From: Mobula hypostoma
Lineage: Eukaryota
Assembly: GCF_963921235.1 (NCBI RefSeq)
Contig: NC_086124.1
Span: forward strand, 24,366,001 to 24,430,000
Length of the DNA: 64,000 nt
Direction: 5' to 3'
Position numbers and translations under genes: made by a program
Shown here: in pieces, positions 14,037-54,024 of the stretch
How the letters are laid out: every line of letters starts with the position of its first letter
Numbering within the stretch: the first letter of the stretch is position 1
Notes under the pieces: model-generated
What the model saw: only the letters and a program-made list of their open reading frames with translations
Database searches by the model: none
Told to the model about the DNA's origin: nothing

Positions 14037-14200
14037 AAATGGTCTCAGGTTTAAGATCATTAATTGAAGCTTCTTTGTGTCAACATTCAACTACTCTGAT
14101 TAGATCATCCCAAAGCAATAATCAGTTCAGAGTCCACAAAATGGAGCGGGAGGTGGAAACAGAGACAATTAGTTTGTCTGCTTCCCCGTTTTGATACATC

Positions 14201-24194: not shown

Positions 24195-24824
24195 GCAAAT
24201 TGCTGACAACAGCGCCCCCACCAGTTTCTTTACAAAACTACATTTATTATAAATTCAAACCACTGCAGTGCTATGATACACCGCATTACAAACAAAAACC
24301 AGGCAAATCATGTCTAACACAGATTAAGCTAACACATTCCTATCCTCATTGAGGATAACATTTAGCTCCTCCCCCCCACCAAAGGAATCCCCCTGTCCCT
24401 CAAACATTGCCAGGTAATCAGCTCAGTCAGAACCCTCCACTACCCACCTCCAAAACCCACAGGTAATTATCTTACCCAGCTACCAGGAGCAGGTTAACTA
24501 GGACATCCTCCTTTCTCCCTGACCCTCGGTACGAGATAACCAAGGATGAAAAGAGTGTGGCTAACAGTGTCCCCAGCTTCTGTGCATTGACACAATAAGG
24601 TCAGTCAGCATAGGAGCAGGCCCTGTGGCCCATCATGTCTATGCTGTCCATCAGATTCACACAGCTCGGGAACAGGCCTTGTTCCTGTCAGTAACCTTAT
24701 GTACATGTAATGCCCTGGTTCGTATTTTTTTTTTACTGTTATGCTGTTCTGTATCTCATTTTATGCTGTTCTGTGCAAGCTGCTTGTTTTTAGCTTATGT
24801 TTGGGTTATTGTTGAAGATAAGAG

Positions 24825-25532
24825 ATAGGAGAATTGCGTGATATCCAATTATGGGCAATTACGGGTAATGTGAGATCGCTGGGAAATAAAATGGATGAGT
24901 TGACAGCACTATCCAGGAGTCAGAGAACATTTCGGGAGTGCAGTGTTATGTGTTTTACTGAAACGTGGCTGACCAAAACGTTTCCATAAAGGGCTTCCAG
25001 ACCGTTTGGGCTGACTGGAAATGCACTGAGAGCGGTAAGCGTAAAGGAGGGGGGCTTGCTGTGCTGGTTAACGACAGATGGTGCAGTCCGGGTCATATTA
25101 CGATCAAGGAACGTGTTTGTAGCCCGGATATTGAACTTTTTGCTGTTAGACTCAGGCCATATTATTTGCCAAGGGAAATCTCACATTCAATTGTGGTTGC
25201 TGTGTACATCTTCCCTCTGCCAACCCGAAATCGGTGTGTAACATCATTTATACTGTTAGGCACAGGAGTACATTCAGCTAGAGACTCATTCCACTGGGAT
25301 GTAGCACTGTCATGGAAAGTCATTCCTGCCTGTGGCCATCAAACTTTGCAGCTCCTCCCTTGGAGGGTCAGACACCCTGGGTCAATGGGCTGGTCCTGGA
25401 CTTATTTCTGTCTGGCATGGTTTACATATTATTATTTGAATGTTTGTGGTTTTGTATTGCTATGTTTGTACTCTGTCCTTGGTTGGTGCAACTGTAACGA
25501 AACCTAATTTCCCTTGGGATCAATAAAAGATG

Positions 25533-25563
<31 letters not shown>
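24825..25563 (+). mobile_element. Internally deleted Rex1/Babar-type element (endonuclease part joined to 3' end)
   Basis: 24825-25255 encodes APE motifs (CFTETW, GGGLAVLVN). From about 25258 it matches 13666-14020. (TCTA)n tail. Confidence 0.7.
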
Positions 25564-25565
<2 letters not shown>

Positions 25566-28414
25566 TAGGATGGTTGGATTAAGGGAGGTTTCTCTGGTGA
25601 GGGACACTAAGGTTGGGCTTGGGGATCTTGTCAGAGAGAGATGAAGAGAGAAGACGCAGGAGAGAAGAGGTTGTAGGGTTCGACCCAGAGCAAGACCGTG
25701 ATTCGACAAAACCTGGGGTGATCGATGGAGGATCACCGATGGGGAAACCGTGAAATCCAACTTGTGCACATTAGACTTTTTCACAAAAATGGGCCCTTTT
25801 CTTTTTTTTTTGTTCTTTCTTTACTAACCCTTTAGTCAAGTTAGGAATTGTAAAGCTAAATCTTTTAACTGTATGCATTGTATTGTCTGTAATTTCACAG
25901 CACTCATTTGTAACAGGGTAACAAATTACACACAAACAGGGGGTTTCGGGGTGGGCTCGTGACTTAGTCTCACACGTTTGGCGGGGCCGGAGATTGTCTT
26001 CCCTGGACTGACGAAGCCGAGGATAACAGAATCCTGTAGCTACTGTCACTTTGTGTACGTAGAATCAGTCCCTGTGTATAAGCTAATCTTGAGTATATGT
26101 GGCTGCACTCAAACTCTCACTTGTACATTCTGTTTTATAGAATTGCTTTTATATTTACTGGTCTTTTTATTGTATTGTTTTGTGCTGCATTGGACTGGAA
26201 GTAACAATAATTTTCTTTTACTTTACGCTTGTGTACTGAAGAATGATAATAAATAATATTTGGTCTTGAACTGAATTAATCTGAGCGAGTAGCCTAACAA
26301 AGGTACAGTACATGTCATCCATGCAGATCATTTCATTACAACTGTGCATTGAGGTAGTACGAGGATAAAACAATAATAGAATACAGAACAAAGAGATACA
26401 GTTTCAGAGTGTAAGTAGGTAGACAATAAGATGTAAGGCCATGGAGAGGCACACAGTGTGATCCAGAGCCCATCTTGTCATACTAGGGAACGATTCAATG
26501 GTCTTCAAACAGCAGGACAGAAACCTGCATTTGGTCCATGTCCCTCTGAACCAGGGGTTCTCAACATTGTTTTATGCCATTGACCCCTGCCATTAACAGA
26601 GGCATCTCAGAACCCCAGGAAGGGTTCTAAACCTTTCCAATCCATGTGAGAATGCTATGAAGGCTTCAAAAGCATGGCTAGGCCTGCCGTGCAATCCTCA
26701 GTCTGTGATCATCGTTCACACAAAGTGTTGCTCTGGATTTCCAGCATCCGCAGAAGCTCTTGTGTTTGTGATTGGATATGTGTTTCGATGTACATGTGAC
26801 AAGTGAGGCTAATCGTTAGATCATTTAATCTTTAATGGCCCAAAGGCCTTTTAAATGTCATAACTATACCTGCCTCAAATATTCCTCTGCCAGCTCATTC
26901 CCAATAACTACAAGACTTCGTGTGGAACAAGTTTCCCCTCAGGTCCTTTATAAGTCTTTCTTTCTCACTCTCTCACTTCTACCCAACCTGGAGAAAAAGA
27001 TTGTATTCACCTTCTCTATGTCCCCTATGACATCACAGAATATTACAGCACAGACAGACCCTTTGGTGCACAATGTTGTGCAGACCTTTAAACCTACTCC
27101 TAATCAATCTACCTCTACACTCCCACATAGAGCTCCATTTTCCTATCATTCATGTACCTATTTAAGAGTTTCTTAAAAGCCCCTAATGTATCTGCCTCTA
27201 CCACCACCCCGGTAGTGCATTCCACACACCCACCACTCTGTGTAAAAACATATCTCTGACATCTCCCCCCACCCCCATACTTCCCATCAATCACCTTAAA
27301 ATTATGCCCTCTTGTATTAGGCATTTCAGCCTTGGGAAAGAGTTTCTGGCTATCTATTTGATCTGTGCCTCTTATCATTTTACACCTCTATGAAGTCAAC
27401 TTTCATCTTATTTGCTCCAAAGAGAAAATCCCTAGCTTGCTCAAACTGTCCTCATAAGACATGCCCTCTAGAACAGACAACATCCTGTTAAATCTCATCT
27501 GCATCCTCTCTAAAGTGTCGATGTCCTTCTTATAATGAAGCAAACATAGCTGAACACAATATTCCAAGAGTGGTCTTATAAATCTCAAAAGTTTATAAGG
27601 TCACCTTTCGAACTCCTACAATTGAGAAGGTAAAGACCCAGCCTATCCAGCTTCTTATAATCTCTTGTCTTGGTAACATCCTGTTTGCACCTTATTCATT
27701 TAATAAAATTCTTCCTACAGGAAAGTAGCCAGAACTGTACATTGATTCAAGAATCAAGTGCATTTATTATCAAAGAATGTAAAAATTAAACAACATTGAG
27801 ATTTGCTTGCTCACAGGTGGCCACAAAGCAAGGAACCTGAAAGAACCTTATTAAAGAAAAAAACAACAATCAATGTGCAAGAGAAAGCAAAAAGAGGTCA
27901 TGCAGACAACAGCATTCCAAACCAAAAATGATCCTTAGATCCGAACCCTGGAGCAGCCCAAAGCCTGGCTTATCAGTTTGTCATGTTAGCGGGCATGGAG
28001 CACAGAAGCTGGGGCAGTCTTCATAGCCTCAGCACTATGGAGGTGACCTTACCAATATGCTATAACATGATATTCCATCTCCTGTACTGAACATTCTCAG
28101 TAATTCTGAGGCACTGCTTCAGAATGGAAGTGTGTCCCTTTAGAACAGAGATGAGGAGGAATTTCTTCAGCCAGAGGGTGGTGAATTTGTGAAATTCATT
28201 GTCACAAACAGCTGTGGAGGTCAAGTCATTGGGTATATTTAAAGTGGAGGTTGTTAGGTTCTTGATTAGTAATGGCATCAAAGGTTCTGGGAAGAAGACA
28301 GGAGAATGGAGTTGAGAGGGATAATGAATCAGCCATGATGGAAAGGCAGAGCAGACTCGATGGGCCGTATGATCTAATTCTGCTCCTGTGTCTTATGGTT
28401 TCTCTCCACTGCAG

Positions 28415-28689
28415 TGAAACGTTCCATCACCATAACGTTAACACAGCTGAACGTGGGAGTAAAGCCCTCAGTCCTGATGTACAGAGTGGATGGACTTTAC
28501 CTAAGGGACGTCAACACAGCGTGGCTGCGGAATGGCGAAGCCATCAAGCAGGAGATGTTCAGGAGCAGCCTTTTGCCAAACTGACACATTCCAACTCAGA
28601 CTTCATGTTCAGCGTTGACCCCAGCAGGGGGGCACCTACACTTCTCAACTGGAGCACAGGGGTGTCCTGGAGAGACTGTGCAGTTTGGG
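28415..28689 (+). pseudogene. Copy 1 Ig C1 exon, decayed
   Basis: ctgcag| VKRSITITLTQLNVGVKPSVLMYRVDGLYLRDVNTAWLRNGEAIKQEMFRSSLLPN ... TFQLRLHV ... GTYTSQLEH ... AVW G|gtgagg. 21 of the first 56 residues are identical to the copy 2 Ig exon without gaps. Both Cys are lost (TAC, TCT). Length 275 nt versus 282. Confidence 0.88.
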
Positions 28690-28774
28690 GTGAGGTCCAG
28701 AGTCTGCACCGATCACAACTACTGTATGTGCTGCTCTGGTGTTCATGGAACTACAAATAATTTTCATCCTGCAG

Positions 28775-38053: not shown

Positions 38054-38204
38054 ATGTGGGGAATGATGCCGTCTCCGCGAACCGTGAGCCAGCTGCTCCT
38101 CCCGCTGTCTCAGGAGCCGCCGGCCGGCGTGAGGCGACGCCGCTCTCCCTCTCTGCTCGCCGCCTTCCTCCTCCTCCTCCTCCTCAACGGCTCCACTGCC
38201 CTGG
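38054..38204 (+). CDS. Exon 1, signal peptide of MHC-like copy 2
   Basis: MWGMMPSPRTVSQLLLPLSQEPPAGVRRRRSPSLLAAFLLLLLLNGSTAL-G. Basic n-region and a poly-Leu core encoded by (CTC)n. Phase-1 donor G|gtgagg at 38205. Lies in a CpG-rich patch. The true start could be ATG 38054, 38063 or 38066. Confidence 0.75.
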
Positions 38205-39180
38205 GTGAGGAGCGCAGCGCCCCAGGGATGGGAGGCGCCGGGGGAGGGGGCACCGATGGAGCGTAGGGAGGTAGAGGGGGGTGGGGACACTGAGGGAGGG
38301 TGGGCAAGAGAGGGAAGAGGGCAACTAGGGAGGGAGGGGAAGGTAAAGGTCAGGAGGGAAAGGGAGACCTCGCTGAAGGAAGGTGGAGAGAGTAGCACCA
38401 AGGGAGGGTGGGGAGATGAACTGAGGGAGGGTTAAGAGGGGAGGGGAGGGAAATGGGCACCGATGGAGGGTGGGGAGAAGAGGGGAGTGATATTGAGGCA
38501 GGGTGGGGAGTGAGCACCAAAGGAGGGTGGAGAGCTGAGGGGAAGGGTGCCAATGGAGGGTGGGGAGGGGGTGAAAAGGGAAGGTGGGGAGGAGTGGGCG
38601 CCAATGGAGGGTAGTGGAGTGGGCACCATGGGAGGGGAAGGGGATCCAAAGGAGAGGAGAGAGGGCATCGAATGGGCATGGGAAGGGAAGGATGCACTGA
38701 GAGAGAGCAGAGAGGGAGGGAGTGGAGGTGGATTGAGTATCGTTGAGGGGTTGGTGGAAGGGGAGGAGTCATTGGGGATGGTTGTGTGGGAGAGGAAATA
38801 GGGTGCCAAAGGTGTGTGGGGAGGGAGAGGGGTGCTAAGGGTGGGACGGAGGGCTGAGGAGTGGAGTTGTGGGGGTGCAGAGAGTGGGGAGGATAGAGGG
38901 CACTGAGATTGGGAGGAGAGGGGGCTATGGGTGAGTGGGTGGGGAGGGACTGCCAAAGATGTTTGGGGAGGGAAGTAGTCACTGAGGGTGGGTAGGGACA
39001 GAGGGAGTGAGTGGAGAGTTGGGTGTGGACAGTGAGGAGAGATGTCTGTGGGGAGAGGTGTTGAGGGAAGGACACTTCAATGGTGAGGAGGGGTTTGGGC
39101 GAAGAGGTGGGTGGGGACGTGGGCATCGAACTGAGGAAGAGGTGGGTGCCGAGAGTGAGGGTGAAGGGTCAGCAGCACCA
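38205..39180 (+). repeat. G/A-rich low-complexity tract filling most of intron 1 of copy 2
   Basis: Continuous GGGA/GGGG-rich sequence with very strong G skew. Confidence 0.8.
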
Positions 39181-39383
39181 CCACCAAATCCCAGCTATTG
39201 GAGTTTTACGGTGGGAGGGAGAGGTGGCTCTGGAGGAGTGGCACCTGTTGCCGTCAGAATGGTGAGGTATCCACAGAAGGGAGAGACAAATTTGTTCTTT
39301 CAGTTTGATTAATTTTAAGGTTTTAAAATAAGCCATTTCACTCTTACAAATGGTTAATGGATCGATTATTATCTGCTTGCCAG

Positions 39384-39633
39384 GAATGCACATCGGTCAA
39401 GTGACTTTCTCTGGTAAAGGTTCAGAGTTCTCAATGGCTACCCTGCAGTTTGCTTACAATGGAGAAGTGGCTGTTTGCTTTGATTATACAACAGGAAAGT
39501 TTGTGGCCATCAATCCATTGTAAAGTCTTTCGTGGACGATCTGAACTGCAATTGAAAGGTTATCAGAAATGTTGCCCGCTATGTTAATGACATGCCATGG
39601 AGATCGTTCACCTGGTTGTTCAAGCTCTGACGG
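39384..39633 (+). pseudogene. Exon 2, MHC membrane-distal domain (class I alpha2/class II beta1 type), frameshifted
   Basis: Acceptor ttgccag, donor G|gtaagt at 39634. Reconstructed GMHIGQVTFSGKGSEFSMATLQFAYNGEVAVCFDYTTGKFVAINP/VKSFVDDLNCN*KVIRNVARYVNDM/AMEIVHLVVQALT. Length is 250 nt (252 minus 2). Frameshifts near 39518 and 39593; TGA at 39553-39555. Confidence 0.8.
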
Positions 39634-41437
39634 GTAAGTTTATTTTCACAAAAAAAATTTGCAGATGCTGGAAATCCGAGCAGCACACACAAAGTGCTGG
39701 AGGAGCTCAGCAGGCCAGGCAGTATCTATGGAAAAGAGTACAGACGACGTTTCGGACTGAGACCATTCATCAGGACTGGAGAAACAAGTTGAGGAGTCAG
39801 AGTTAGGAGGTGGAGAGGGGTGAAGTAAGGAGCTGGGAAGTTGATTGGGAAAAGAGGTGCAGGACTGGAGGAGGAGGAATCTGATAGGAAAGGACGGAAG
39901 GGCATGGAAGAAAGAAAGGGGGGAAGCACCAGAGGGAGGTGATGTGCAGGTAAGGTGAGAGAGGGAAAAGGGAATGGGGAATGATGAAGTGGGGGGGGGT
40001 GTTATTACTGGAAGTTCGAGAAATCGATGTTCATGCAATCAGGTTGGAGGCTACCCAGGTGGAATATGAGATGTTACTCCTCCAACCTGAGTGTGGCCTC
40101 ATCCTGACAGAAGAGGAGGCCATGGCATGGGAGTGGGAAGTGGAATTAAAGTTTTGTTTTCAAAGCGATGTTCAAGCAGGCTGTGTGGCATAGGCTGACA
40201 GAGAGGGCAAAACAAGGGAACACACGCACCAGTCCTCAAAGAGGAATCAGAAGCGGAGGGAGTGAGCAATTTCAAGTTATTAGGCGACAATATCTCTGAG
40301 GATCTATCCTGGGCCCTACATGTCGAGGCAGTTATAAAAAGGCACAACAGCGGCTATATTTCATTACGAGTTTGAGGAGATTTCGTATGTCAAATTTCTA
40401 CAGATATACCATGGAGAGGTACAACTGGCTGCCCATGTGGGGAGGGGGTGTAGATACTGCAAAGGGTTGAAAGAAGCTGCAGAAAGTTGTGAACTCAGTC
40501 AGTTCCATCATGCGTACGATCCTCCTTAGCATTTAGGAAACTTCAAGGAGTGATGCCTCAAAAAGGCAACATCCATCATTGAGGACCCTCACCACCCAGG
40601 ACATGCCCTCTTCTCAGTGCTCCCTTCAGGGAGGAGGTACAGGAGCCTGAAGGCACACACTAAAGGATTCAGGAAAAGCTTCTTCCCTTCTGCCATCAGA
40701 TTTATGAACAGTCCATGAAAAACCCATGAACATAACCTCACTATTTTTGCTCTCTATCTGAACTATTTATTTCATTTAAATATGTTTATAATTGTAATTT
40801 ATTCCTTTAATGTATTACACCATATTGCTGGCAGAAGACAGCAAACTTGTCAGGAAGAAGACCTGATACTCAGTGACCACTTTATTAGGTTTTTCCTGTG
40901 GCTAATAAAGTGGCCACTGAGTGTATGTTCGTGGTCTTCTGTTGCTGTAGCCCACTGTTTCCCAACTTCTTTTAGCCCCATGCCTCCCTAAAGCACTTTC
41001 ATACTAGCCAATACTCCTCTTAGGCACAATGTACTTTCTGACACCCCCATGGTGTAAAAGCATGTCTACCATATGCTAACATGAGAAAACTGATTCTGAT
41101 TTAAATTTTTATTTGTCTTTAAACCTAGCTTACACAGTACCTACACACTGTACAGCAGCTTCGATATGAAGGTGATCCTTGAGCTTGAAGGTTTTTTTTT
41201 AGCAAGAATTGAAATATCTGGTTCAAGTTGTGACAGCAAAAGCCTTAAGTCAAGGCTTTTGAATCACACGTGACAATATCCAAGCGGTTTCTGTTTTTTT
41301 GTGAGTTTGTGGTTCATTGCACTTTCAATAAGGTAGGAGGATAGAAATGCAACGAAGAACAGTTTGGCTCTTCTTCAAAGACCAGGAAACTTCATATGAC
41401 CCTCTAGCCACATACCACAGAAGTCGACATCTTTTAA

Positions 41438-44400
41438 TTTTTTTATTTTTTATTTTTATTGAAGGAAGGACACAATACAGAATACATAATGGATTACATT
41501 TTCCTCCATTTTGCTTTTATATCTTACCCCTAAATAAACCTCCCCTCGCCTGCCCTCCCTGAACATACCATGGCAGCTGTATTTATAATATTATTTATTG
41601 TATTTACAATACAACAATTCACAAATACAAGTACAGACATTTCACAGCCATACCCCCACACTACTTAAAGACGAAGGCCCACATACATCCACAACATGTC
41701 AGATGATCCAAAATACACTCATATTACAACTCAACAACCACCCATAAACCATATGCGTGTTAAAAGGGAGACAACTTCCCAAGTACAATCAAATGCCCTC
41801 AGCTCGTAGGTAATTCCTTAAGACCTCCAAAATATGACAAGAAAGGTCCCCATTTTGAATAGAATTTTTTCACAAACCCTCTCAAAGTGAATTTAATCTT
41901 TTCTAATTTTAGAAAAAACATTACGTCCTCTAACCAAGCAGCAGCAGATGGGGGACTGGCAGATTTCCAGACCAGCAAGATTCTCCTACAGGCCAATAGC
42001 GATGTAAATGCAATGATATCCGACTGGCTTGCATTTAAACCCAAAACATCATCTGCCACACCAAATACAGCTATAAGCAGGCAAGGTCTCAGTGTCACCC
42101 CCAAAACCTCACTGATAATTTTAAAAACCAGTGCTCGATAGCCATCAAGCCGAGAACAAGACCAAAATGTATGCACTAAACCAGCCGGAGAGAACACTTG
42201 TCACAGCCAGCGTCTGTCCCGGGATATATGTCAGCAAGGCTGGCTTTACATAAATGTACCCTGTGTAAAACTTTAAATTGTATGAGCCCCAGTCTAGCAC
42301 ATGATGATGAGAAATGAACCCTATTCAATGCTTTTGCCCAATATTCTTCAACCAGATCCATACCAAGGTCATTCTCCCACCTAGTTTTAGTTTTGTTTAG
42401 ATCTTGAACTCCCAAAGACATCAGCTGAGAGTATAGTACAGAGATCAGCCCTTTATTATTAAAGCTAAGAGTGAGTTTTTCCCACAATATAGCAGGTGGT
42501 AGATCAGGAAAAAAGGGAAATTTTTCCTTGACAAAGTGGCGAATCTGCAGGTATTTAAAAAAATGATTATGCGGAAGGCCATACTTACCGTGCAGGTTAT
42601 CAAAACTATCAAATATGTTATCAGTATACAAATCCTTAATGCACATAAGACCGTTCAAACCCCATTGTCTGAAAGCTGAATCGAATGTGGAGGGAAGAAG
42701 TAGATGGTTTCTATGAATGGGACCCAAAACTGAAGCTGATGTGAACTTACAGTGGAGCGAAATTGATTAAAAATTTTGAGGGTGGAGAGCACGACCGAGT
42801 TAAATGTGAATTGAGAGGATTTCAATGGTAAGGAAGAATACACTAAAGCTGGGAGAGACAAGGAGTGGCAAGACCGTGACTCAAGCAGGCACCAGATTAT
42901 ATCTGGCTGGTGGAGCCAAAATAATACTTTTTGAATGTTTGATGCCCAGTAATAATGAATAAAGCTAGGAAGGCCCATTCCACCTACGACACGACCTCTT
43001 TGGAGAGTGCGCTCATTAACCCTTGAGACCTTATTTTCCCAAATAAAGGAAGTTATAGCTTGGTCGACTGATTTGAAAAATAACTTCGATAAGAAAACTG
43101 GCAAGCACTGGAACAAATAAAGAAATCTGGGAAGTTTAGACATTTTCACTGATCGAATTCTCCCGGCTATAGTAAGAGGTAAACTGCACCATCTCTCAAA
43201 ATCAGCCTTTAATTGGCTAACCTGAGGCCTGTAGTTAGCTTCAGAGGTGTAAAAGAGTGAGTAACATGTATTCCTAGGTATACAAAACCATCCTGAGATA
43301 CAGGAAAAGGCAAAGATTCCTGTCGGATCTGTAGGGCCAAGTTATTAATGGGAAATCATTTGCTTTTTTGAAGGCTCAGTTTATAGCCAGAGAAGGCTCC
43401 AAATTGACCTAATAATGATACAATAGCAGGACTGCTACCTGCAGGGTCGCTAACATAAAGTAAGAGGTCATCAGCATATAGGGATACACGGTGTTCCATG
43501 TTCCCTCTCCTAACACCTTGAAATCATGTAGTTGACAAGTGCAATAGAAAGAGGCTCAATTGCAATTGCAAAAAAGAAGAGGGGACAATGGGCAGCCTTG
43601 GTGAGTGCCACGTCTTAATGGGAAATAGTCAGATCGAAAATAATTTGTCTGTATACACACTAAAGGCAAGTGATATAATAGCTTAACCCAGGCTACAAAT
43701 ATACTGCCAAATCCAAATTTCTCCAAAACTCTAAACAAGTATACCCACTCCACTCTATCAAACGTCTTCTCCGCATCCAAGGAGATAACAACCTCCGGAC
43801 TCGGAGAATCACTGGGTGAATAAACCACATCAGCCAGTCGACGGATATTAAAAAAAGAATGACAATATTTAATAAAACCTGTTTGATCATCTGAAATTAT
43901 CTTGGGAAGGGGACGTTCTAAACGGCACGCAAGCACTTTAGCCAAAATTTTCACATCCACATTCAAAAGTGAGATGGGGCGATATGATCCACATTGAGTC
44001 AGGTCCTTGTCCTTTTTAAGAAGAAGTGAAATAGATGCCTATGAAAGAGTAGGGGGTAAGGGACCATTCTCCAAAGATTCCTGAAACACTTCTAGAAGGA
44101 CCGGTATGAGCTTATCCTTAAATTTCTTATAAAATTCTATCAGATCATCATCAGGACCTGGGGACTTACCACTCTGCATAGCCATAATGGCATTATTAAT
44201 CTCTTCCTGCCCCAAGAGCCCGATCTAAATTCTCCACCTCCTCTGGTTCAAGAGTTAGTATTTCCAAATTATCTAAAAAACGTTCCATATTTGTTATATC
44301 TGATGGAAACTCTGAGGTATACAGAGAGGAATACAAAGTTGCAAAGATGTTATTAATCTCTTTTGGATTGCTTGTCAACCTTTGATGCGCGTCTCTTATC

Positions 44401-47400
44401 TGGGGAATAAGTCGTGATGCAGCTTGACGCTTCAACTGATGAGCCATAAGCCGGCTCGCCTTGTCACCATATTCATAATAGAGGCCACGTGTCCTAAGAA
44501 TTAATTGTTCTGATAGGTTTGTAGAGAGAAGATTAAACTTTGCTTGCAAATCAGCCCAGCTTTTATATAATTCCGCAGTGGGTGCCTCAGAATATTGCCT
44601 ATCCAGGTCCAAAATAGATTGCGATAACACTTGCATTTCCTTCCTATGCTCTTTATTGGCATGTGAAGTATGAGATATTATTTGACCCCTCAAGTAAGCT
44701 TTTAAAGTTCCCCAAAGTAAAGAGTACGATACAGACTCAGTTTTGTTGGTCTCGAAGAATGTGTCAATGTTAGCCGATATACAACTACAAAATTTCTCAT
44801 TGGAAAGCAAAAGGGGGTTAAGTCTCCACAGAGGCCATTCTCTAATGTTTAAAGGAAAACATGGGTTCTGTTTCACGGGCGAGTGATCAGATATAACTAT
44901 AGCAGTGTACTCAATTTGTCTAATCATTAGTATCAAGGAGCTATCTATAAAGAAATAGTCTAGCCTGGAATAGGAGTGGTGAACATGAGAAAAGAAAGAG
45001 AATTGCCTAACTGATGGATTCAAAAATCTTCAAGGTTCCATATAACCATTTTCATAGAAAATAGGTGCAGGAGTAGGCCATTCAGCCCTTCGAGCCTGCA
45101 CCGCCATTCAGTATGATCATGGCTGATCATCCAACTCAGAACCCTGTACCTGCCTTCTCTCCATACCTCCTGATCCCTTTAGCCACAAGGGCCATATCTA
45201 ACTCCCTCTTAAATGTAGCCAATGAACTGGCCTCAACTGTTTCCTGTGGCAGAGAATTCCACAAATTCACCACTCTCTGTGTGAAGAAGTTTTTCCACAT
45301 CTAGGTCCTAAAAGGCTTCCCCTTTATCCTCAAACTGTGATCCCTCGTTCTGGACTTCCCCAACATTGGGAACAATCTTCCTGCATCTAGCCTGTCCAAT
45401 CCCTTTAGAATTTTATACATTTCAAATAAGATCCCTCCTGAATCTTCCAAATTCCAGAGACTATAAGCCGAGTCGATCCAGTCTTCCATCATATGAAAGT
45501 CCTGCCATCCCAAGAATCAATCTGGTGAACCTTCTTTGTACTCCCTCTATGGCAAGAATGTCTTTCCTCAGATTAGGGGACCAAAACTGCACACAATGCT
45601 CCAGGTGTGGTCTCACCAAGGCCTTGTACAACTGCAGTAGTACCTCCCTGCTCCTGTACTCGAATCCTCTTGCTATGAACGCCAGCATACCATTTGCCTT
45701 TTTCACCGCCTGCTGTACCTGCATGCCCACTTTCAATGACTGGTTTACAATGACACCCAGGTCTCGTTGCACCTCCCCTTTTCCTAATCGGCCACCATTC
45801 AGATAATAATCTGTTTTCCTGTTCTTGCCACCAAAGTGGATAACCTCACATTTATCTCCATTAAATTGCACTTGCCATGAATTTGCCCACTCACCTAACC
45901 CATCCAAGTCACCCCGCATCCTCTTAGCATCCTCCTCACAGCTGACACTGCCGCCCAGCTTCGTGTCATCCGCAAACTTGGAGACGCTGCATTTAATTCC
46001 CTCGTCTAAGTCATTAATATATATTGTAAACAACTGGGGTCTCAGCACTACGCCTTCTGGTACCCCACTAGTCACTGCCTACCATTCTGAAAAGGTCCCA
46101 TTTATTCCCACTCTTTGCTTCCTGTCTGTCAACCAATTCTCCATCCACATCAATACCTTACCCCCAATACTGTGTGCTTTAAGCTTGCACACTAATCTCC
46201 TGTGTGGGACCTTGTCAAAAGCCTTTTGAAAATCCAAATATACCACATCCACTGGTTCTCCCCTATCCACTCTACTAGTTACATCCTCAAAAAATTCTAT
46301 GAGATTCGTCAGACATGATTTTCCTTTCACAAATCCATGCTGACTTTGTCCGATGATTTAACTGCTTTCCATCAATGTTCTGTTATCACATCTTTGATAA
46401 CTGACTCTAGCATTTTCCCCACCACCGATGTCAGGCTTACCGGTCTATAATTCCCCGGTTTCTCTCTCCCTCCTTTTTTAAAAAGCGTGGTTACATTAGC
46501 CACCCTCTAATTCTCAGGAACTAATCCAGAATCTAAAGAGTTTTGAAAAATTATCACTAATGCATCCAATATTTCTTGGGCTACTTCCTTAAGCACCCTG
46601 GGATGCAGACCATCTGACCCTGGGGATTTATCTGCTTTTAATCTCTTCAATTTACCAAACACCACTTCCCTACCGACATGTATTTCCCTCAGTTCCTCCA
46701 TCTCACTAGACCTTCGGTCCCCTACTATTTCCAAAAGATTACTTATGTCCTCCTTGGTGAAGACAGAACCAAAGTAGTTATTCAATTGGTCTGCCATGCC
46801 CTTGTTCCTCATGATCAATTCATCTGTTTCTGCCTGTAAGGGACCTACATTTGTCTTAACCAATCTTTTTCTTTTCACATATCTATAAAAGCTTTTACAT
46901 TCAGTTTTTATGTTCTCTGCCAGCTTTCTCTCATAATCTTTTTTCCCTTTCCTAATTAAGCCCTGTGTCCTCCTCTGCCGGACTCTGAATTTCTCCCAGT
47001 CCTCAGGTGTGACGCTTTTTCTGACTAACTTGTAGGTTTCTTCTTTAGAATTGATACTATCCCTAATTTCCCTTGTCAGCCACGGGTGCACTACCTTCCC
47101 TGGTTTATTCTTTTGTCAATCTGGGATGAACAATTGTTGGAGTTCATCCATGCGATCTTTAAATGCTTGCCATTGCATATCCACCGTCAACCCTTTCAGT
47201 ATCACTTGCCAGTCTATCTTAGCTAATTCACGTCACATACCTTCAAATTTACCCTTTTTAAGTTCAGAACCTTTGTTTCTGAATTAACTATATCACTCTC
47301 CATCTTAATGAAGAATTCCACCGTATTATGGTCACTCTTACCCCAGGGGCCTCACACGACAAGATTGCTAACTAACCCTTCCTCATTGCTCACTACCCAG

Positions 47401-50195
47401 TCTAGAATGGTCTACTCTCTAGTTGGATCCTTGACATGTGGATTCAGAAAACTATCCCGCATACATTCCAAGAAATCCTCTTCCTCAGCACCCTTACCAA
47501 TTTGGTTCATCCAATCTATATGTAGATTGAAGTCAGCCAGGATAACTGCTGTTCCTTTATTGCACACATTTCTAATTTCCTGTTTAATGCCATCCCCAAA
47601 CTTACTACTACTGATAGGTGGCCTGTACACAACTCCCACCAGCGTCTTCTGTCCCTTAGTGTTATGCAGCTCTACGCATATCGATTCCACATCCTCCCAG
47701 TTAATGTCTTTCCTTTCTATTGCGTTAATCTCCTCTCTAACCAGCAATGTCACTCCACCTTCTTTCCTTTCATGTCTATCCCTCCTGAATATTGAATATC
47801 CCTGAATGTTGAGCTCCCATCCTTGGTCACCCTGGAGCCATGTCTCTGTGATCCCAACTATATTATATTTATTAATAACTATCTGCACATTCAATTCATC
47901 CACCTTGTTATGAATGCTCCTTGCACTGATACACAAAGCCTTCAAGCTTGCTTTTACAACACTCTTAGCCTTTATACAATTATGTTGAAAAGTGGTCCTT
48001 TTTGATTTTTGCCCTGGATTTTGTTGCATAAACATCGAGAAGGCCTTTGCCATACCAGAAAATGTTCCCCTAGAGCTAGACCTATCAAGCAGTGGGTCAA
48101 TAGCACAGTTCAAATCTCCTGAAAAGATTAGATGGTGTGTATTCAGGTTAGGTATTAATGACAAAACCTTATTTGCAAAGTGGACGTCGTCCCAATTAGG
48201 GGCATAAACATTTACCAAAAGGACAGGTATCTGAAAAAGAGATCCAGAGACTATAATAAAACGACCATTAGGGTCACTGATTACATCAGATGGTGTAAAC
48301 TGCATTCTATTGGTGATTAATATTGCCACCCCCTTGGACCTACTATTAAATCTGGAATGAAAAACCTGACTAATCCATGCTTTACGAAGTCTATTATGGT
48401 CTGCCACTATTAAATGTGTCTCTTGTTGAAATAGTATATCTGCTTTTAATTGTTTCAGATGAGAGAAAACTTCAGCTCTTTTAACAGGACCATTGAGCCC
48501 CTTTACATTCCAAGAAATAAACCTCACAGGGTGGCCTCCACCAGCAGCACTCATGTCAACCATATCAAAAAACAAACAGGGCCCACAATCCAAAACAGTG
48601 CAAGGGCACAAGCTGCACACAATAACGCACAATGAAAAGGAAGTCTGGCCAATCCGTAACACACAAAACAATAAGCTGCCATGGTGCCATGCAAAACACT
48701 CCCCCCACCCCTTTACACAAACAACAAAAAAACCCAATTAACCCCCGAAAACTAGATCTACCTCCCCAACTGAGGATGATCACAGGCAGTACCCAACAAA
48801 ACACTTCCAAAGCGTTCCCCATACAACCAAACTTTCAATCTAATCCAGGGTGGCTCCCCTCCTTAAAATTTATACCATCACTTTAATATATTTAGGCTAA
48901 AGATAACACAGGTCAAGCAAAACATTAAAAAAAAACTAGGAAACTAAACGCCAGAGATACAAATCCCAAATATTTACATTTTGCTGGTTGAAAGTTTTTG
49001 TTAATCAGATTCCGCAGCACAGCAATTCGACCTGATTGTGTTCCTCAAATTAAACTGGAAAAAATGGACAAAGAAGTGGATTGTGAAAATTAACAGTTTG
49101 CCTCGGCTAGAGGCCCCTTCAATGCTGCATGAATAACCTAAAAAAAAAGTCATTGCTCTTCTCGTTCTTCTTCTCCCCAGTGCGAATGGGAAAACTCTTT
49201 GGCCGCCTCTGGTGAATCAAAATAATGCTTTTTACCTTCATGCATGATCCGGAGCCAGGCAGGATACAAGAGGCCAAACCTGACCCCTTTCCTGTAAAGC
49301 AGGGATTTCACCTTGAAAGCTGCTCGTTTTTTCCCCAGCTCCGCACTAAAATCTTCATGAAAAAACACACGATGTCCGTGGAAATACAGCTTCTGCTTCC
49401 ATCTATTGATACATTGCTTATCTTAAAGAAGTGAAAGAGAACCAGGAACGTTCTTGGTTTTGTTTGCTTAGCTTCAGAGACACCGGATGGTTTAGGCCCA
49501 ACTTGGTGAGCACGAGAAAGCACGAGAGGCCTTGGGAAGAAATTTGTCCCCAGCACTTCGTCAAAAAACTCGGTCATAAGTTTAACAGAGTCCGAACCTT
49601 CCAAATTTTCAGGAATGCCGACCACTCTCAAATTGGATCTCCACGACCGATTTTTGAGGTCATCAAGCTTTCTCTTCAGAAACGCGTTTTCGCTCTGCAA
49701 CGCTGCAATGGCGGCTTCGGCGCTCACCGGTCAGTCACTGTAATCATTCAGGCCGTCTTCAACCCCACGAATGCGTTCATCGTGTGACTCGTAATAAGAC
49801 ATAATTTGTTCCATGGTAGCATTCACTGGTGACAAAGCATCTTCAAGTTCTCTTTTTAGGGTAGAATGCATCACTTGCATCATGTCAGTAAGAAGTACTA
49901 AACGAAGCCTCTCCAAGTCATCGGGCAGTGCAGGTCCAGGTCCAGCAACGTGCAACAGCACCATTACTGTAACATCAGCTTTCTTGCTCGAGGCTTCACT
50001 ATCTGTTTCCCCAGTTTTACTTCGAAGGTACATTTTATTTGCCATTTCAGTGTCCAGCAACGTCCCGGGTTGTTCACAATGTTAAATATTCAGTTATCTC
50101 AAGCATACGGCAAAGATAAACAGGTAGATTTTCAATAAAAATTGGGAGCCACACTCACACGCACCCAGTCACTCCATGCTCAATCTGGAAGTCCC
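41438..50195 (-). mobile_element. Full-length, decayed L1-clade LINE
   Basis: TSD AAGTCGACAT(C)TTTTAA at 41421-41437 and 50198-50213. Poly-A at the left end. ORF1 fragments 50060-49150. ORF2 starts near 48560 (FISWNVKGLNGP, QETH), with many frameshifts. Confidence 0.9.
45053..48017 (-). mobile_element. CR1 LINE inserted into L1 ORF2
   Basis: APE (GITETW) and RT (LDFQKAFDKVPH, KFADDTK) motifs. ATTTT flanks both sides (45048-45052 and 48018-48022). Excision restores L1 MQQNGY...RFLNP. Confidence 0.9.
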
Positions 50196-53100
50196 AAAAG
50201 TCGACATTTTTAAGTAAGCATTTTTTCTTCTCCCTTATTCTGAATTTTGATAATTTCTTCTTGCAAGCTCTCTTTCTGTTCTTCCACCTTGAAAAGGAAT
50301 GGGCTAATTACCCAGTCCGAAATTTCTGGATCATTCAAATCCTTGAATCAATTCCGAAAATCATTCTTCGGTGACTACAGGTGTAAGGAGCACTCTTGCA
50401 AATCACCATCTGTGAAAGAGAGTGTCATACTTTCCATGCAGGGAAACTGAGAACATTCTTCTCCCAATGTTTTGCTTACGTATTTTCAATTTTCTGATAA
50501 AAGTGGACACTGCACTTTTCGTCTGGTTTAAATTGAAGTTTTCACCCTGCAGTCTCATATTTAGAATATTCAGTTTGTCATACAGATTGGCTTCATTTGC
50601 CACATCTCCATATAGAAGTTCAATCTTGTTGACTTCCACCAGTGTCAAAAAGATCAAAGAAACGTTTTAAGCATCAGCTTTTTGACAGTCAACACACTTC
50701 AGTGTGAAGAAGCAAGCGTTCAATCTCTGCATTGTTATCTTGGCATAAATGGTGAAATATTCTGCTAGTTAATGGATGAGCTTTAATTTTGTTGATAGCA
50801 GATATTACAAGAGTCATGCTTGAAAAAACTCACGAGCTGAAGTTTTTGGCTGTGAGGTGTTGACGATGAATTACACAATGGATGTAAACAAACTTGGAAT
50901 TTCCTTTTTCATTAATGCCACTAAACCGGCATGGCAACCTGTCATTTATGGTGCTCCACCTCTTGTACCAGAAATCATGTTCCTAATTGAAATACTTTCA
51001 TCCTCAGTATATATTTTACAAATGAGAGTCTCTTCATAAACTTTTCCCTTTTTGAAAAACCGTACATATGACTTTAGCAATGCTGCGTTGCCTTACACTG
51101 TTTTCTCATCCAGTTGTATCCCAAATTCTGTTTTTTGTGGCTCTGTGCACAGTTGATATTCCACATCTTTACTCATTGCATCAATACGATGAGCTATTGC
51201 TCAGAGGAATTGATTTTAAAATACTGGTTTCCATTTTGAGAACAGTGGTGAAGCATTTCTGATCCAGTCGGCATTATTAATCTTTCATCAATTCTATGAG
51301 ATTTTCCACACCTTGTTATCATTTTGGAAATGATATAAGAAGCAATAAGGCCACAAGGCAAATGACTCGAGTGTGCAATGGTTTTCCAATGCTTCTTTCA
51401 TCTTCTTGAACCAAGTAATACCATAAGTAGCCTTTTCAGGGTGTCTTTTACAGAAGTGTTCCTGCAATCTTGATGGTTTCATGTATTCATTAGACAGTAC
51501 AGTATTACAAATAGGAAACATGGGGCGCTGCTGATCTAACAGGATGGAATAAAACCATACTCCAGCTATGTAACTTTGTATTGACACACTTTGTGTAGTT
51601 TCTGTTTCTTAGTAGGATTAGAATTCAAGGCTTCACTGCCTTCAAACTTGTAGAGATCGCACCGTACGTACTTACCCACTGTTTACGGGACTAAATTAAA
51701 ATAATAAATTAACACCACTGGGAATGCCTATCGGATGTTGACGGCAGTGAGTTGACACGGATGGAAAGATGGCAGCAGCACGCAAAGGAACAGCGAGGCA
51801 AAGGTGAAGACGATCACAACTATAAAAATTACATTGACAAGGATTCAGATTGGAATCAAATGTTAGTCATGACAGAGCTTGTGTTTGGGAAGCTATCTTC
51901 TTACTATTTCCAGTTAGCACAATTGACCAATCAAGTAAGGTCTCGTAATCCCCAAAGATGGTTCTTGACCGCACATATAAAGCCGAGGTCACTTTGAACA
52001 CCTCAAGAGGATTCCTCAGAGTTGACAGGTTCACTGATTGACTCTATTTCACCCTTTGGTTCCAACCAGCGCTGTATCATTGCGCGACCTGTTTTCCCTA
52101 GGTCTGTTGCGAAGGTTGAGAGGGTGTACTTGACTTATCAACTGTTAAATTGCATGAACTCGTTCTGTGCTGCAAGTCAAGGGTAATTGTTGGACACCCT
52201 GGTTGCTAATTTATGCATCCCCAATAATGTCTGTTTGGTTGGTAAAGTTGGATGAGATTGTTAAATTTCAGACTTGATGTGACGACAAGTGCTCACCGCC
52301 CGCTGAGCTGTGGTTCTTCCTGTGTGTTCCAGTGCCTCATCCTTTTTGTCGGAAGTGCCTACTCTACTAACGGTTGGCCAGGTCTCGAGCCTCAAGTAAG
52401 GGTGCCACTCTCCCCCCGATGACATCTATTTCCCCTAACACCTCCTTAGAACCTCAAACTGCCTCCTTGGGGAGCGATACCGCATCCCCCACCTTGGAAA
52501 TCACTGCTGCAGCTCATTCACTTTGAGGTTTCACATGTTGTACATTCAGAGATGCTCTTCTGCACACCACTGCTGTAACACATGGTGATTTGAGTTATTG
52601 TCCTCGTCCTGTCAGATTGAACCAGTCTGGCCATCCTCCTCTGACCTCTCTCATTAACAAGGTGCTTTCACCCACAAAACTGCCGCTCACTGGATGTTTT
52701 TTCTTTGTCACAACGTTCTCTGTGAACTCCAGAGACTGTTGTGTATGAAAATCCCAGGAGATCAGCAGTTTCTGAGATACTCAGACCACCCCATCTGGTC
52801 CATGGTCAAAGTTAATTAGATTGCATTTCTTCCCCATTCTGATGTTTGGTCTGAACAACAACTGAACCTCTTGACCATGTCTACATGCTTTTATGCATTG
52901 AGTTGCTGGCACATGATTGGCTGATTAGAGGTTTATATTAACGAGCAGGCGTACCTAATAAAGTGGACACTGAGTCTATGTCATTGATATCAGACCTGAT
53001 TCCGATATGCACTAACCTGTAACTAATTAACCTCACTATGCAAATTTTTATTCCTAGGTATTTCCACCTTACGGAAACTTTGGGTTACCGACAGTTCTTG

Positions 53101-53226
53101 GAACTTTCATTTGACTTGGGAGTGACTGAAAGAACCATACCCCTGGTAAGAGGCAGATGACCGGGGACAATTTCTAAACACAAAAGATTCTGCAGATGGT
53201 GGCAATCCAAAGCAGTTCCAGATTGC

Positions 53227-53253
53227 CACACACACACACACACACACACACAC
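53227..53253. repeat. (CA)n microsatellite
   Basis: cacacacaca run inside a SINE-like segment. Confidence 0.85.
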
Positions 53254-53742
53254 AAGAATTCAGCAGGCCAGGCAGCATCTAGGGAGGTGAATAAACATAG
53301 GAACAGAATTAGGCCATTCAACCTATTGTGTCTGTTCCACCATTCTATCATGGTGGAATCTCAAGGTTGTATACGTTATACTTTATTGTCACCAAACAAT
53401 TGATACTAGAACATACAATCATCACGATGATATTTGATTCTGCACTTCCCGCTCCCTGGATTACAAATCGATAGTAAATATTAAAAATTTAAATTGTAAA
53501 TCATAAATAGAAAATAGAAAAATGGAAAGTAAAGTAGTGCAAAAAAACCGAGAGGCAGGTCCGGATATTTGGAGGGTATGGCCCAGATCCGGGTCAGGAT
53601 CCGTTCAGGAGTCTTATCACATAATGTATAATGTACACATGCTTTAATAATAAACATACTTTGAACTTTGAAATTCTGTTGCTCTTTACTTTTTCTGATC
53701 CTGTAACCAAGTTCAACTTCAATATGTTTCTGTCCACGGCAG

Positions 53743-54024
53743 CGAAGCTGATGATCACAATAACCTCAAGACACCTGAAGAACAGAGAGAATACCTTGGT
53801 CCTAACATGCCAAGTGCATGGATTTTATCCCAAGAAAATCCACGCAACGTGGCTGCGGAATGGTGCGGTGATCGATCGGGAAGTGCTAATGACGAAAATT
53901 TTACCCAACCGGGATGGGACGTTCCAAGTCCGGCTACAGGTCGAAATTGACCCCAGGAAGGGTGACACTTACACTTGTGAAATCGAGCATCTGAGCGTCC
54001 CTGACAAGCTACATACAGTTTTGG
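53743..54024 (+). CDS. Exon 3, Ig C1-set domain with MHC class I alpha3-type motifs (open frame)
   Basis: 282 nt, phase 1-1 (cag| ... G|gtaagg). AKLMITITSRHLKNRENTLVLTCQVHGFYPKKIHATWLRNG...ILPNRDGTFQVRLQVEIDPRKGDTYTCEIEHLSVPDKLHTVL. Both Cys and the core Trp are present, with C-x5-YP and YxCxxxH motifs. Confidence 0.92.

What the first reader, a model, noticed from the sequence alone, without database searches (positions are those of the whole stretch)
38054..54024. MHC gene with class II layout and class I residues: a W-category beta-like chain or a new two-domain lineage
Seen: a leader exon (phase 1), then one distal exon, then an Ig-C1 exon. The 1.2-kb first intron is mostly G/A low-complexity and shows no alpha1 exon. 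The distal exon has class I alpha2 hallmarks: GxHxxQ (Gln in the position of HLA Q96, which contacts beta2m) and QFAYNG. The Ig exon has GFYP and LPNRDGTFQ, i.e. the P235/G239/Q242 pattern of class I alpha3, rather than the NGDWTFQ of class II beta2. Its length of 282 nt matches class II Ig exons (class I alpha3 exons are typically 276 nt). Established: W-category MHC (Okamura, Dijkstra, Hashimoto and colleagues, 2021) has class II chain organisation with class I-type interfaces. Inference: this is a WB-type gene in a cartilaginous fish, possibly an undescribed lineage.
Basis: partly seen in the sequence, partly recalled or inferred. Interest (0 to 1): 0.85.

Follow-up and report, generated by a model that had tools for sequence, protein, structure and literature searches.

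The report
Broken W-category MHC beta-chain gene copy
This is a damaged copy of a W-category MHC beta-chain gene (the WB_DS1-like lineage, described in sharks and skates in 2021) in a manta/devil-ray-like genome, so it adds one more member to a known, unusual MHC family and is not a new kind of MHC molecule.

Summary
The exons are real. The leader is 38054-38204 (phase 1), the distal (beta1) exon is 39384-39633, and the Ig-C1 (beta2) exon is 53743-54024 (282 nt). No alpha1 exon exists: RNA contigs join the leader directly to beta1.

The gene belongs to the published W-category WB_DS1-like lineage (Okamura et al. 2021). Its closest intact relatives are auto-named "class II beta chain-like" proteins of Mobula, Hemitrygon, Hypanus, Pristis, skates and sharks. 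The great white shark and skate members match the paper's "WB DS1L" rows. So the "WB-type" reading is right, and the "undescribed lineage" reading is not supported.

The window copy is a pseudogene. Its beta1 exon has a 1-nt deletion, a TGA stop (CAA in an intact paralogue) and a 7-nt deletion. A contig from a run of another study carries all three lesions unchanged, so they are not assembly errors. The same species expresses an intact paralogue.

No TM exon and no WA partner gene lie in the window. An older, decayed copy sits 10-14 kb upstream. In the zebra shark, the orthologous WB gene sits head-to-head with a WA_DS10-like gene, and a complex model supports their pairing through the class I-type contacts.

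The scan's own notes list other W-like loci on the same chromosome piece.

Verdict: new member of a known kind, modest interest.

The parts
38054..38204 (+). Leader exon (151 nt, phase 1). It encodes a 50-aa leader with an RRRR stretch before the hydrophobic core.
   Evidence: 86-96% identical to the leaders of Mobula P0002/P0004/P0005/P0006. The donor is CTGG|GTGAGG. RNA contigs run from the 5' region through the leader into exon 2.
38205..39383 (+). Intron 1, 1179 nt of G/A-rich low-complexity sequence, with no coding exon.
   Evidence: 73% purine. tblastn finds nothing there. Contigs of runs X3 and X12 skip it entirely.
39384..39633 (+). Beta1 (membrane-distal) exon, 250 nt instead of 258, and disrupted.
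   Evidence: 80-87% identical to Mobula P0002 over the first reading frame. Weak Pfam MHC_II_beta match, E=0.003. Frames read.
39517..39518 (+). Lesion 1: a 1-nt deletion in the Leu codon of INPL|VKS. It brings TAA at 39521-39523 into frame.
   Evidence: The intact paralogue contig of run X12 has an extra C behind 39517. Compare the P0002 protein.
39553..39555 (+). Lesion 2: a TGA stop in the frame of the relatives. The intact paralogue has CAA (Gln) here and another variant has CGA.
   Evidence: X12 shows T>C at 39553 and G>A at 39554; the X3 variant shows T>C only. P0002 has Q at this position.
39592..39593 (+). Lesion 3: a 7-nt deletion (TGCCTTT in the intact paralogue) inside DMPFAMEIV.
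   Evidence: X12 has TGCCTTT put in behind 39592. The X3 contig identical to the window over 39488-39619 spans all three lesions.
39634..53742 (+). Intron 2, 14109 nt, inflated by LINE fragments on the minus strand (about 42176-48737).
   Evidence: Pfam RVT_1 and Exo_endo_phos matches on minus-strand ORFs. No MHC-like exon by tblastn with 165 proteins.
53743..54024 (+). Beta2 Ig-like C1-set exon, 282 nt, intact, with the class I/W-type P57 and G61 (LPNRDGTFQ).
   Evidence: C1-set E=9e-18. 89% identical to Mobula hypostoma P0001/P0002. Run X3 holds 80% of its sampled 31-mers.
23947..28738 (+). Older decayed WB-like copy in tandem: a beta1 remnant at about 23947-24069 and an Ig remnant at about 28414-28738.
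   Evidence: tblastn gives 35-48% identity. Translation shows a stop, a frameshift and loss of both Ig cysteines.

Best explanation
The stretch is the 5' three exons (leader, beta1, beta2) of a pseudogenised W-category MHC beta-chain gene of the WB_DS1-like lineage. It lies in the genome of a mobulid-like myliobatiform ray.

Intact members of the family are type I membrane proteins with leader, beta1, Ig-like beta2 and TM/cytoplasmic parts. They are thought to pair, like class II, with a W-category alpha chain (WA_DS10-like) that is encoded head-to-head in sharks. The interfaces are of class I type:
- The Trp61 of the WA Ig domain inserts under the beta1 sheet against Q6/A32/G35(/D37).
- P57 of beta2 contacts Tyr8 of WA.

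The window copy is a recent Mobula-lineage duplicate. It has lost its beta1 reading frame through a 1-nt deletion, a nonsense codon and a 7-nt deletion. Its second intron has been inflated to 14 kb by LINE insertions, and it has no WA partner or TM exon within the window.

It seems still to be transcribed and spliced, but it cannot make a full-length chain.

Shown: the exon anatomy, the lesions, the family placement, the absence of alpha1 and the existence of an intact expressed paralogue.

Inferred: the heterodimer mechanism (from the paper's salamander experiment, shark gene linkage and a structure model) and loss of function.
For: - **Family.** The Ig exon is 73-89% identical to Mobula, Hemitrygon and Hypanus "class II beta-like" proteins, with nearly the same leader.
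- **Family is sharply bounded.** A profile of the family gives all elasmobranch members at least 203 bits. The next best hits score at most 120 bits (a bat DRB-like protein) and about 100-112 bits (reptile MR1/class I-like).
- **Identity with the published lineage.** P0063/P0158 (Cetorhinus/Carcharodon) match the row "great white shark WB DS1L" closely. P0170 (Amblyraja) matches the shown part of "little skate WB DS1 like 01" exactly. P0123 (Stegostoma) closely resembles "whale shark WB DS1 like". All rows are in Dataset S1/S2 of PMC8713811.
- **Tree of leader to beta2.** The window copy sits with M. hypostoma P0001/P0002 (95/92), inside a myliobatiform clade (100/100), and is 92% identical to P0002.
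- **W/class I hallmark residues.** Q6, A32, G35, P57 and G61 are present, and there is no W61.
- **No alpha1 exon.** A 685-nt contig of X3 and a 746-nt contig of X12 run from the 5' region/leader straight into 39383/4. The X12 contig continues from 39633 into an Ig exon.
- **Lesions are real.** A 132-nt X3 contig is identical to the window over 39488-39619. The intact paralogue differs by exactly +C, +TGCCTTT and TGA to CAA.
- **Partner and mechanism.** In Stegostoma locus L001, a WA_DS10-like gene lies head-to-head with the WB_DS1-like gene.
- **Complex model.** The model of their ectodomains scores 0.81 against 0.48 for the best of 3 controls. That mark was reached by 51 of 78 solved complexes and 2 of 108 mismatched pairs. 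The runs agree in at least 74% of contacts and the partner's pLDDT is at least 82.
- **Model contacts.** WA W168 touches WB Q22/A39/G42/D44, and WB P155 touches WA Y117.
Against: - No CP/TM/CY exon was found up to 64000, so the 3' end of the gene is unseen. It may lie beyond the window or be lost.
- No WA gene is in the window, unlike the head-to-head pairs of sharks.
- D37 of the W/class I beta1 motif is Val here.
- RNA contigs cannot be assigned with certainty to this copy rather than to a near-identical allele or paralogue:
  - The leader-containing contig has a Leu run 9 nt shorter and one mismatch.
  - The Ig sequence spliced to 39633 in X3 differs by one base in 30.
  - X3 holds 80%, not 100%, of the Ig exon's words.
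- The runs are only guessed to be RNA; spliced contigs are the sole support.
- The complex pass may reflect memory of solved MHC structures, and it concerns a shark orthologue pair, not this gene.
- The Ig-only tree had a single class II beta sequence and biased class I sampling.
Confidence: 0.85

Rival explanations
1. A live WB gene whose beta1 frameshifts and stop are assembly or sequencing errors.
For: The Ig exon and leader are intact, splice sites are canonical, and transcripts of near-identical sequence exist.
Against: A contig of run X3 (a different study from the best DNA holder) is identical to the window across all three lesions, at a depth like that of the other variant. Three separate lesions within 80 nt, one of them a 7-nt deletion, are unlike typical consensus errors.
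Confidence: 0.04
2. The copy still makes a product by skipping or truncating the broken beta1 exon. The leader spliced to the Ig exon is in frame (phase 1 to phase 1), giving a beta1-less Ig-only chain.
For: Mobula gene models of this kind exist. P0005 joins the leader directly to the Ig domain plus TM. P0001 uses a cryptic donor after ...DDLNLQSK and has a non-TM tail. A contig matching the P0001-type variant is present in X3.
Against: No leader-to-Ig joint was seen, but it could not be looked for because the stretch limit prevented laying both exons together. No TM exon is in the window. Such models may simply be annotation work-arounds for damaged exons.
Confidence: 0.08
3. A class I gene that lost its alpha1 exon in this copy only.
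For: The Ig exon has P57/G61/Q like class I alpha3. In PDB searches it scores about as well against MR1/class I alpha3 (about 63-65 bits) as against DR beta2 (69.5 bits).
Against: All intact relatives from at least 12 elasmobranch genera are two-domain chains of 260-290 aa without alpha1. Transcripts join the leader to beta1 directly. A class I alpha1-alpha2 query does not hit the family, whereas a class II beta1 query does. The TM region of relatives is of the class II beta/WB glycine-rich type.
Confidence: 0.01
4. A new two-domain MHC lineage distinct from the published W-category lineages.
For: The ray sequences are only about 44% identical to great white shark WB_DS1L over the whole protein. 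They have a ray-specific long leader and lack D37.
Against: The alignment with shark WB_DS1-like is collinear end to end. The skate member shows the published little skate WB_DS1-like Ig sequence. The family forms one sharply bounded group in the profile search. I could not include WB_DS3 or WB_Nds5L in a tree.
Confidence: 0.02

Closest known systems
W-category MHC beta chain, WB_DS1-like lineage (Okamura, Dijkstra, Hashimoto et al., PNAS 2021, PMC8713811): banded houndshark WB_DS1, great white shark WB_DS1L, little skate WB_DS1-like
   Same: - The exon layout is the same (leader, beta1, 282-nt beta2, all phase 1).
- The beta1 domain is about 85-86 aa and lacks the beta1 disulfide pair.
- GxHxxQ and FAY(D/N)G are present in beta1.
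- AKPxITIT...GFYP...WLRNG...LPNxDGTFQ...YTCxxxH is present in beta2.
- Relatives share the WB-type glycine-rich TM.
- The skate and shark family members match the paper's rows.
   Different: - This copy is a pseudogene with no TM exons and no WA partner in view.
- The myliobatiform sequences have a 50-aa leader with RRRR, and Val/Thr/Glu instead of Asp at beta1 position 37.
- The family is expanded in Mobula: five differently named gene models on one M. hypostoma chromosome, some with damaged or skipped beta1.
- Rays of this order are not covered in the paper.
Conventional MHC class II beta chains (e.g. HLA-DRB, chicken BLB2)
   Same: - Two-domain beta-chain architecture, 282-nt Ig exon, and the same phases.
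- The beta1 profile gives its best PDB hit to chicken BLB2 (E=1.4e-5), and a weak Pfam MHC_II_beta hit.
   Different: - The Ig domain has G61 and P57 instead of the invariant W61 of class II beta2 (NGDWTFQ).
- There is no beta1 Cys15-Cys79 pair.
- The beta1 domain is shorter.
MHC class I heavy chains (alpha2-alpha3), including MR1
   Same: - The interface residues Q6 (HLA Q96), A32, G35, P57 (P235), G61 (G239) and Q match.
- The family's beta1 profile aligns its positions 2-49 to class I/MR1 alpha2 residues 91-140.
- The Ig exon scores about 63-65 bits against MR1/class I alpha3.
   Different: - There is no alpha1 exon or domain.
- There is no alpha2 disulfide.
- The partner is a membrane-bound WA chain, not beta2-microglobulin.

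Membership tests
W-category WB (beta chain) | Class II beta-type gene architecture: leader, one distal-domain exon, one Ig-C1 exon, then CP/TM/CY exons, with no alpha1 exon | tested here: inconclusive
   The first three exons are present with the right phases, and transcripts join the leader directly to beta1. CP/TM/CY exons were not found within the window. Intact relatives have them.
W-category WB (beta chain) | Beta2 Ig domain with P57, and G61 in place of the W61 that is invariant in conventional class II beta2 | tested here: met
   The window reads ILPNRDGTFQ. The criteria come from PMC8713811.
W-category WB (beta chain) | Beta1 residues shared with class I alpha2 at the interface with the WA/beta2m Trp61: Q6, A32, G35, D37 | tested here: inconclusive
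   Q6 (MHIGQ), A32 and G35 (FAYNG) are present. Position 37 is Val, not Asp. Shark relatives keep D37.
W-category WB (beta chain) | Sequence clustering with published WB sequences | tested here: met
   Family members match the Dataset S1/S2 rows for great white shark WB DS1L, and match the shown part of little skate WB DS1-like 01 exactly. The tree is and the profile score gap. WB_DS3 and WB_Nds5L sequences could not be fetched for the tree.
W-category WB (beta chain) | Paired head-to-head with a WA gene | tested here: not met
   No WA exon was found anywhere in the 64-kb window using the Stegostoma WA exons or a regex scan. The feature is met at the Stegostoma orthologous locus L001. Only a shark WA was available as probe, so a decayed ray WA could be missed. 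The scan's notes place WA/WB loci 260 kb upstream and 3.4 Mb downstream (not tested).
W-category WB (beta chain) | Forms a heterodimer with WA | not testable with these tools
   The window copy cannot encode a full chain. For the Stegostoma WB/WA pair, a model supports binding: 0.81 against 0.48 for the best of 3 controls. The mark was reached by 51 of 78 solved complexes and 2 of 108 mismatched pairs, contact agreement is at least 74%, and partner pLDDT is at least 82. Experimental pairing is shown only for tiger salamander (PMC8713811).
Conventional MHC class II beta | Invariant W61 in beta2 (NGDWTFQ), and the beta1 disulfide | tested here: not met
   The window has G at position 61 (RDGTFQ). 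No Cys pair is present in beta1 of the window copy or of P0002.
MHC class I heavy chain | Alpha1 exon/domain preceding alpha2, in a three-domain heavy chain | tested here: not met
   No alpha1 is present in the window, in the transcripts or in any intact relative. A class I alpha1-alpha2 query does not hit the family.

The most novel reading that the evidence does not exclude
Mobulid rays may carry an actively turning-over, expanded WB_DS1-like family. In this reading, orphan copies without a WA partner, and copies with broken beta1 exons, are still transcribed and yield beta1-less or truncated Ig-only chains (as in models P0005 and P0001). The window copy would be one such source, or a donor for gene conversion, and would not be simply dead DNA.
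Probability: 0.1. Interest if true: 0.45.

Novelty: new member of a known kind. Interest (0 to 1): 0.3.

Why it matters
W-category MHC is the proposed intermediate between class II and class I, so every well-placed member helps to map its history.

This case shows three things:
- The WB_DS1-like lineage persists in myliobatiform rays.
- It has multiplied there. Databases label the copies "class II beta chain-like", which hides them.
- The family evolves by birth and death, leaving tandem pseudogenes that lack the alpha-chain partner.

It does not change the picture drawn in 2021. Its practical value is for annotation: these loci should be named WB, and this copy flagged as a pseudogene.

Tried and rejected
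- **TM/cytoplasmic exons.** I searched downstream of 54024 and after the older copy, using the C-terminal parts of six relatives at very permissive settings. Nothing was found. The "Gly-containing TM exon" of scan note s1-143922 could not be reproduced this way.
- **WA partner in the window.** Stegostoma WA exons, a C1-set regex and tblastn with all 165 fetched proteins gave nothing except the WB exons.
- **Ray genomic loci.** No DNA is served for Mobula or Hemitrygon, and four isoform proteins are not on record.
- **Batoid WA protein.** A search with the Stegostoma alpha2 frame returned only three orectolobiform WA proteins.
- **Representative search with the Ig exon.** It was dominated by multi-domain fusion models. 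Only the single-stretch hits were useful.
- **Ig-only tree.** The class I alpha3 clade attaches as a long branch inside the WB grade, only one class II beta was available, and long-branch warnings were raised. I do not use it to place WB relative to class I or class II.
- **PDB search with half of the window's beta1.** It gave only chance-level hits.
- **Literature.** No paper on W-category genes in Mobula or stingrays is in the held library.
- **Promoter motifs upstream of 38054.** I inspected them by eye only. Contigs extend at least 300 nt beyond 37950, so the start site lies elsewhere, and no claim is made.
Full report
**Observation**

- The ATG at 38054 opens a leader exon that ends at 38204 (CTGG|GTGAGG), 151 nt, phase 1.
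- Intron 1 is 1179 nt, 73% purine and 48% G.
- The distal exon runs from 39384 (ttgccag|GA) to 39633 (ACGG|GTAAGT), 250 nt.
- The Ig exon runs from 53743 to 54024, 282 nt, phase 1 at both ends.
- The motifs G-MHIGQ, LQFAYNG, GFYP and LPNRDGTFQ are all there.
- The Ig exon is a C1-set domain (Pfam E=9e-18).
- The window has no N runs.

The distal exon is not an open frame. It reads MHIGQ...AINPL, then TAA, and it continues in two other frames with a further TGA.

**What it is**

A search with the Ig exon found ten proteins of Mobula hypostoma, M. birostris and Hemitrygon akajei that are 73-89% identical. They are automatically named "class II histocompatibility antigen beta chain-like".

The full-length ones (269-293 aa) have nearly the same 50-aa leader as the window. 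After it come an 85-86-aa distal domain (77 aa in one sublineage), the Ig domain and a glycine-rich TM. None has a second distal domain.

A profile of the ray and shark members retrieves a sharply bounded family from Mobula, Hemitrygon, Hypanus, Pristis, Rhinoraja, Amblyraja, Heptranchias, Hemiscyllium, Chiloscyllium, Stegostoma, Cetorhinus and Carcharodon, all at 203 bits or more. The next best proteins score at most 120 bits (a bat DRB-like protein) and about 100-112 bits (reptile MR1/class I-like).

**Identity with the published W-category lineage**

Okamura et al. 2021 (PMC8713811) define W-category as follows:
- WA and WB chains have class II architecture.
- The interdomain residues are of class I type: in WB, P57 and G61 of beta2 and Q6/A32/G35/D37 of beta1; in WA, W61, Y8 and no W37.

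Their Datasets S1-S3 hold the sequences.
- The row "great white shark WB DS1L" (GAHMLQAQ FSIEK SH ... SLRFAYDGTEVIQFNYT TN; beta2 TKPSVNITAHRLHSG KDPLHLIC.VNGFYPRGINATWL) corresponds to P0063/P0158 of Cetorhinus/Carcharodon.
- The shown part of "little skate WB DS1 like 01" (AKPAITITSRRPNAQ GHPLVLTCRVDGFYPMDINTTWL RNGKDI) is identical to Amblyraja P0170.
- "Whale shark WB DS1 like" corresponds to Stegostoma P0123.

The ray proteins align collinearly with these from end to end.

In a maximum-likelihood tree of leader to beta2, the window's conceptual reading (X at each break) groups with M. hypostoma P0001/P0002 (95/92). That group lies inside a Mobula group (95/93) and a myliobatiform clade (100/100). 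The window reading is 92% identical to P0002.

The gene is therefore a WB_DS1-like gene of a mobulid-like ray. The paper reports W genes in "sharks and skates" only. I found no paper on W genes in stingrays or mantas.

**Class I versus class II character**

The Ig exon has P57 and G61 (LPNRDGTFQ) instead of the class II NGDWTFQ. In PDB searches it scores about equally against DR beta2 (69.5 bits) and MR1/class I alpha3 (about 63-65 bits).

The distal domain has Q6, A32 and G35, but Val at position 37.

By overall similarity the distal domain is not especially class I-like:
- Pfam gives a weak MHC_II_beta hit.
- P0002's beta1 alone finds only chicken class II beta weakly.
- The family profile finds chicken BLB2 best (E=1.4e-5), then chicken class I alpha2 and MR1, with profile positions 2-49 aligned to alpha2 residues 91-140.
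- A bat class II beta1 query hits the family, whereas a reptile class I alpha1-alpha2 query does not.

This mixed picture is what the W-category paper describes.

**Pseudogene status**

Intact relatives need a 258-nt beta1 exon, and the window has 250 nt. Comparison with P0002 predicted three lesions: a 1-nt loss after INPL, a stop at the Gln of NRDQK, and a 7-nt loss in DMPFAMEIV.

Public runs of what appears to be the same species confirm this exactly.
- A 746-nt contig of run X12 is an intact paralogue.
  - It has +C behind 39517 and +TGCCTTT behind 39592.
  - At 39553/4 it reads CAA instead of TGA.
  - It runs from the 5' region through the leader into beta1, and from 39633 into an Ig exon (AKPTITIT...).
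- A 132-nt contig of run X3 is identical to the window from 39488 to 39619, across all three lesions. X3 comes from a different study than the best DNA holder.
- A second X3 variant carries CGA at this codon but lies in another reading frame (+A behind 39516, +C behind 39545). This makes a CGA to TGA change plausible as the last step, by inference.

The lesions are therefore real and not assembly errors.

A 685-nt X3 contig joins the 5' region and leader to 39383/4 with no mismatch in beta1, so intron 1 is spliced out and no alpha1 exon intervenes.

Assignment of the spliced contigs to this copy, as against an allele or a very close paralogue, is not certain:
- That contig's Leu run is 9 nt shorter than the window's.
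- The Ig sequence attached to 39633 in X3 differs by one base in 30 (Pro for Leu).
- X3 holds 80% of the Ig exon's sampled words.

**Context**

- Intron 2 (14.1 kb) holds LINE endonuclease and reverse-transcriptase fragments on the minus strand, and no MHC-like exon.
- No CP/TM/CY exon was found up to 64000.
- No WA exon is detectable anywhere in the window.
- An older WB-like copy lies upstream on the same strand, with a beta1 remnant at about 23947-24069 and an Ig remnant at about 28414-28738.
  - It has a stop, a frameshift and both Ig cysteines replaced.
  - Its beta1 motif resembles the Pristis P0173 sublineage.
- The rest of the window is LINE-rich.
- The scan's own notes (unchecked) list W-like alpha/beta loci 260 kb upstream and 3.4-3.7 Mb downstream on the same piece. 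This fits the five differently named gene models on one M. hypostoma chromosome.
- Some of those models (P0001, P0003, P0005) lack all or part of beta1. This suggests further damaged copies and a birth-and-death family.

**Mechanism of the intact family**

In Stegostoma locus L001, the WB_DS1-like gene (10001-18538, +) lies head-to-head with a 268-aa gene (3846-9330, -). The neighbour's exons match the paper's "whale shark WA DS10 like" row. It carries L37, W61 (SKGWRFQ) and Y8, as the paper reports for catshark WA_DS10-like/WB_DS1-like pairs.

A complex model of the two ectodomains supports binding:
- The score is 0.81, and the best of 3 controls is 0.48.
- The mark was reached by 51 of 78 solved complexes and 2 of 108 mismatched pairs.
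- The runs agree in at least 74% of contacts, and the partner's pLDDT is at least 82.

The most confident contacts are WA W168 with WB Q22, A39, G42 and D44, and WB L154/P155 with WA Y117. These are exactly the class I-type interfaces proposed by Okamura et al.

This is a model of a shark orthologue pair, and it may draw on solved MHC structures. It shows likeness, not binding, and it says nothing about the broken window copy.

**Verdict**

"WB-type gene" is right, and "new lineage" is not supported. The copy is a pseudogene of a known lineage in an order of rays where the family has not, to my knowledge, been described. Interest is modest.

Noticed in passing
window 23947-24069 and 28414-28738 (+): An older, heavily decayed WB-like copy lies in tandem upstream. 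It has a beta1 remnant (LRFGYDGKDNTYFDFS...) and an Ig remnant with a stop, a frameshift and both cysteines lost. Its beta1 motif resembles the Pristis P0173 sublineage. I could not find the TM exon claimed in scan note s1-143922.
   Followed up: partly
window 15693-19576 (+), 12688-13836 (+), 42176-48737 (-): LINE-type retrotransposons are present. One is a near-complete ORF2 (endonuclease plus RT, 899-aa ORF). Several fragments lie inside intron 2 of the WB pseudogene.
   Followed up: partly
proteins P0001, P0003, P0005 (Mobula gene models): Several annotated Mobula "isoforms" lack all or half of beta1 or the TM. P0001 uses a cryptic donor after DDLNLQSK; the homologous site in the window is AAAG|GT at 39558/9. 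They look like work-arounds for damaged beta1 exons, which hints at more pseudogenes in the family.
   Followed up: partly
window 38054-38204; proteins P0002-P0010, P0166: Myliobatiform WB genes share a 37-51-aa leader with an RRRR stretch before the hydrophobic core. Shark orthologues have a leader of about 17 aa. This suggests an unusually long signal-peptide n-region or an N-terminal extension.
   Followed up: no
window 39654-39745: A very high-copy dispersed repeat lies just inside intron 2. Summed contig depths reach 10^5-10^6 in all runs laid.
   Followed up: no
L001 3846-9330 (-) and 10001-18538 (+): In Stegostoma tigrinum, the WA_DS10-like and WB_DS1-like genes lie head-to-head about 0.7 kb apart. 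Both are auto-annotated as ordinary class II alpha/beta-like.
   Followed up: yes
window upstream of 37950: The X3 contig that contains the leader extends about 300 nt beyond 37950. This implies a long 5' UTR or an upstream non-coding exon, and the start site was not located.
   Followed up: no
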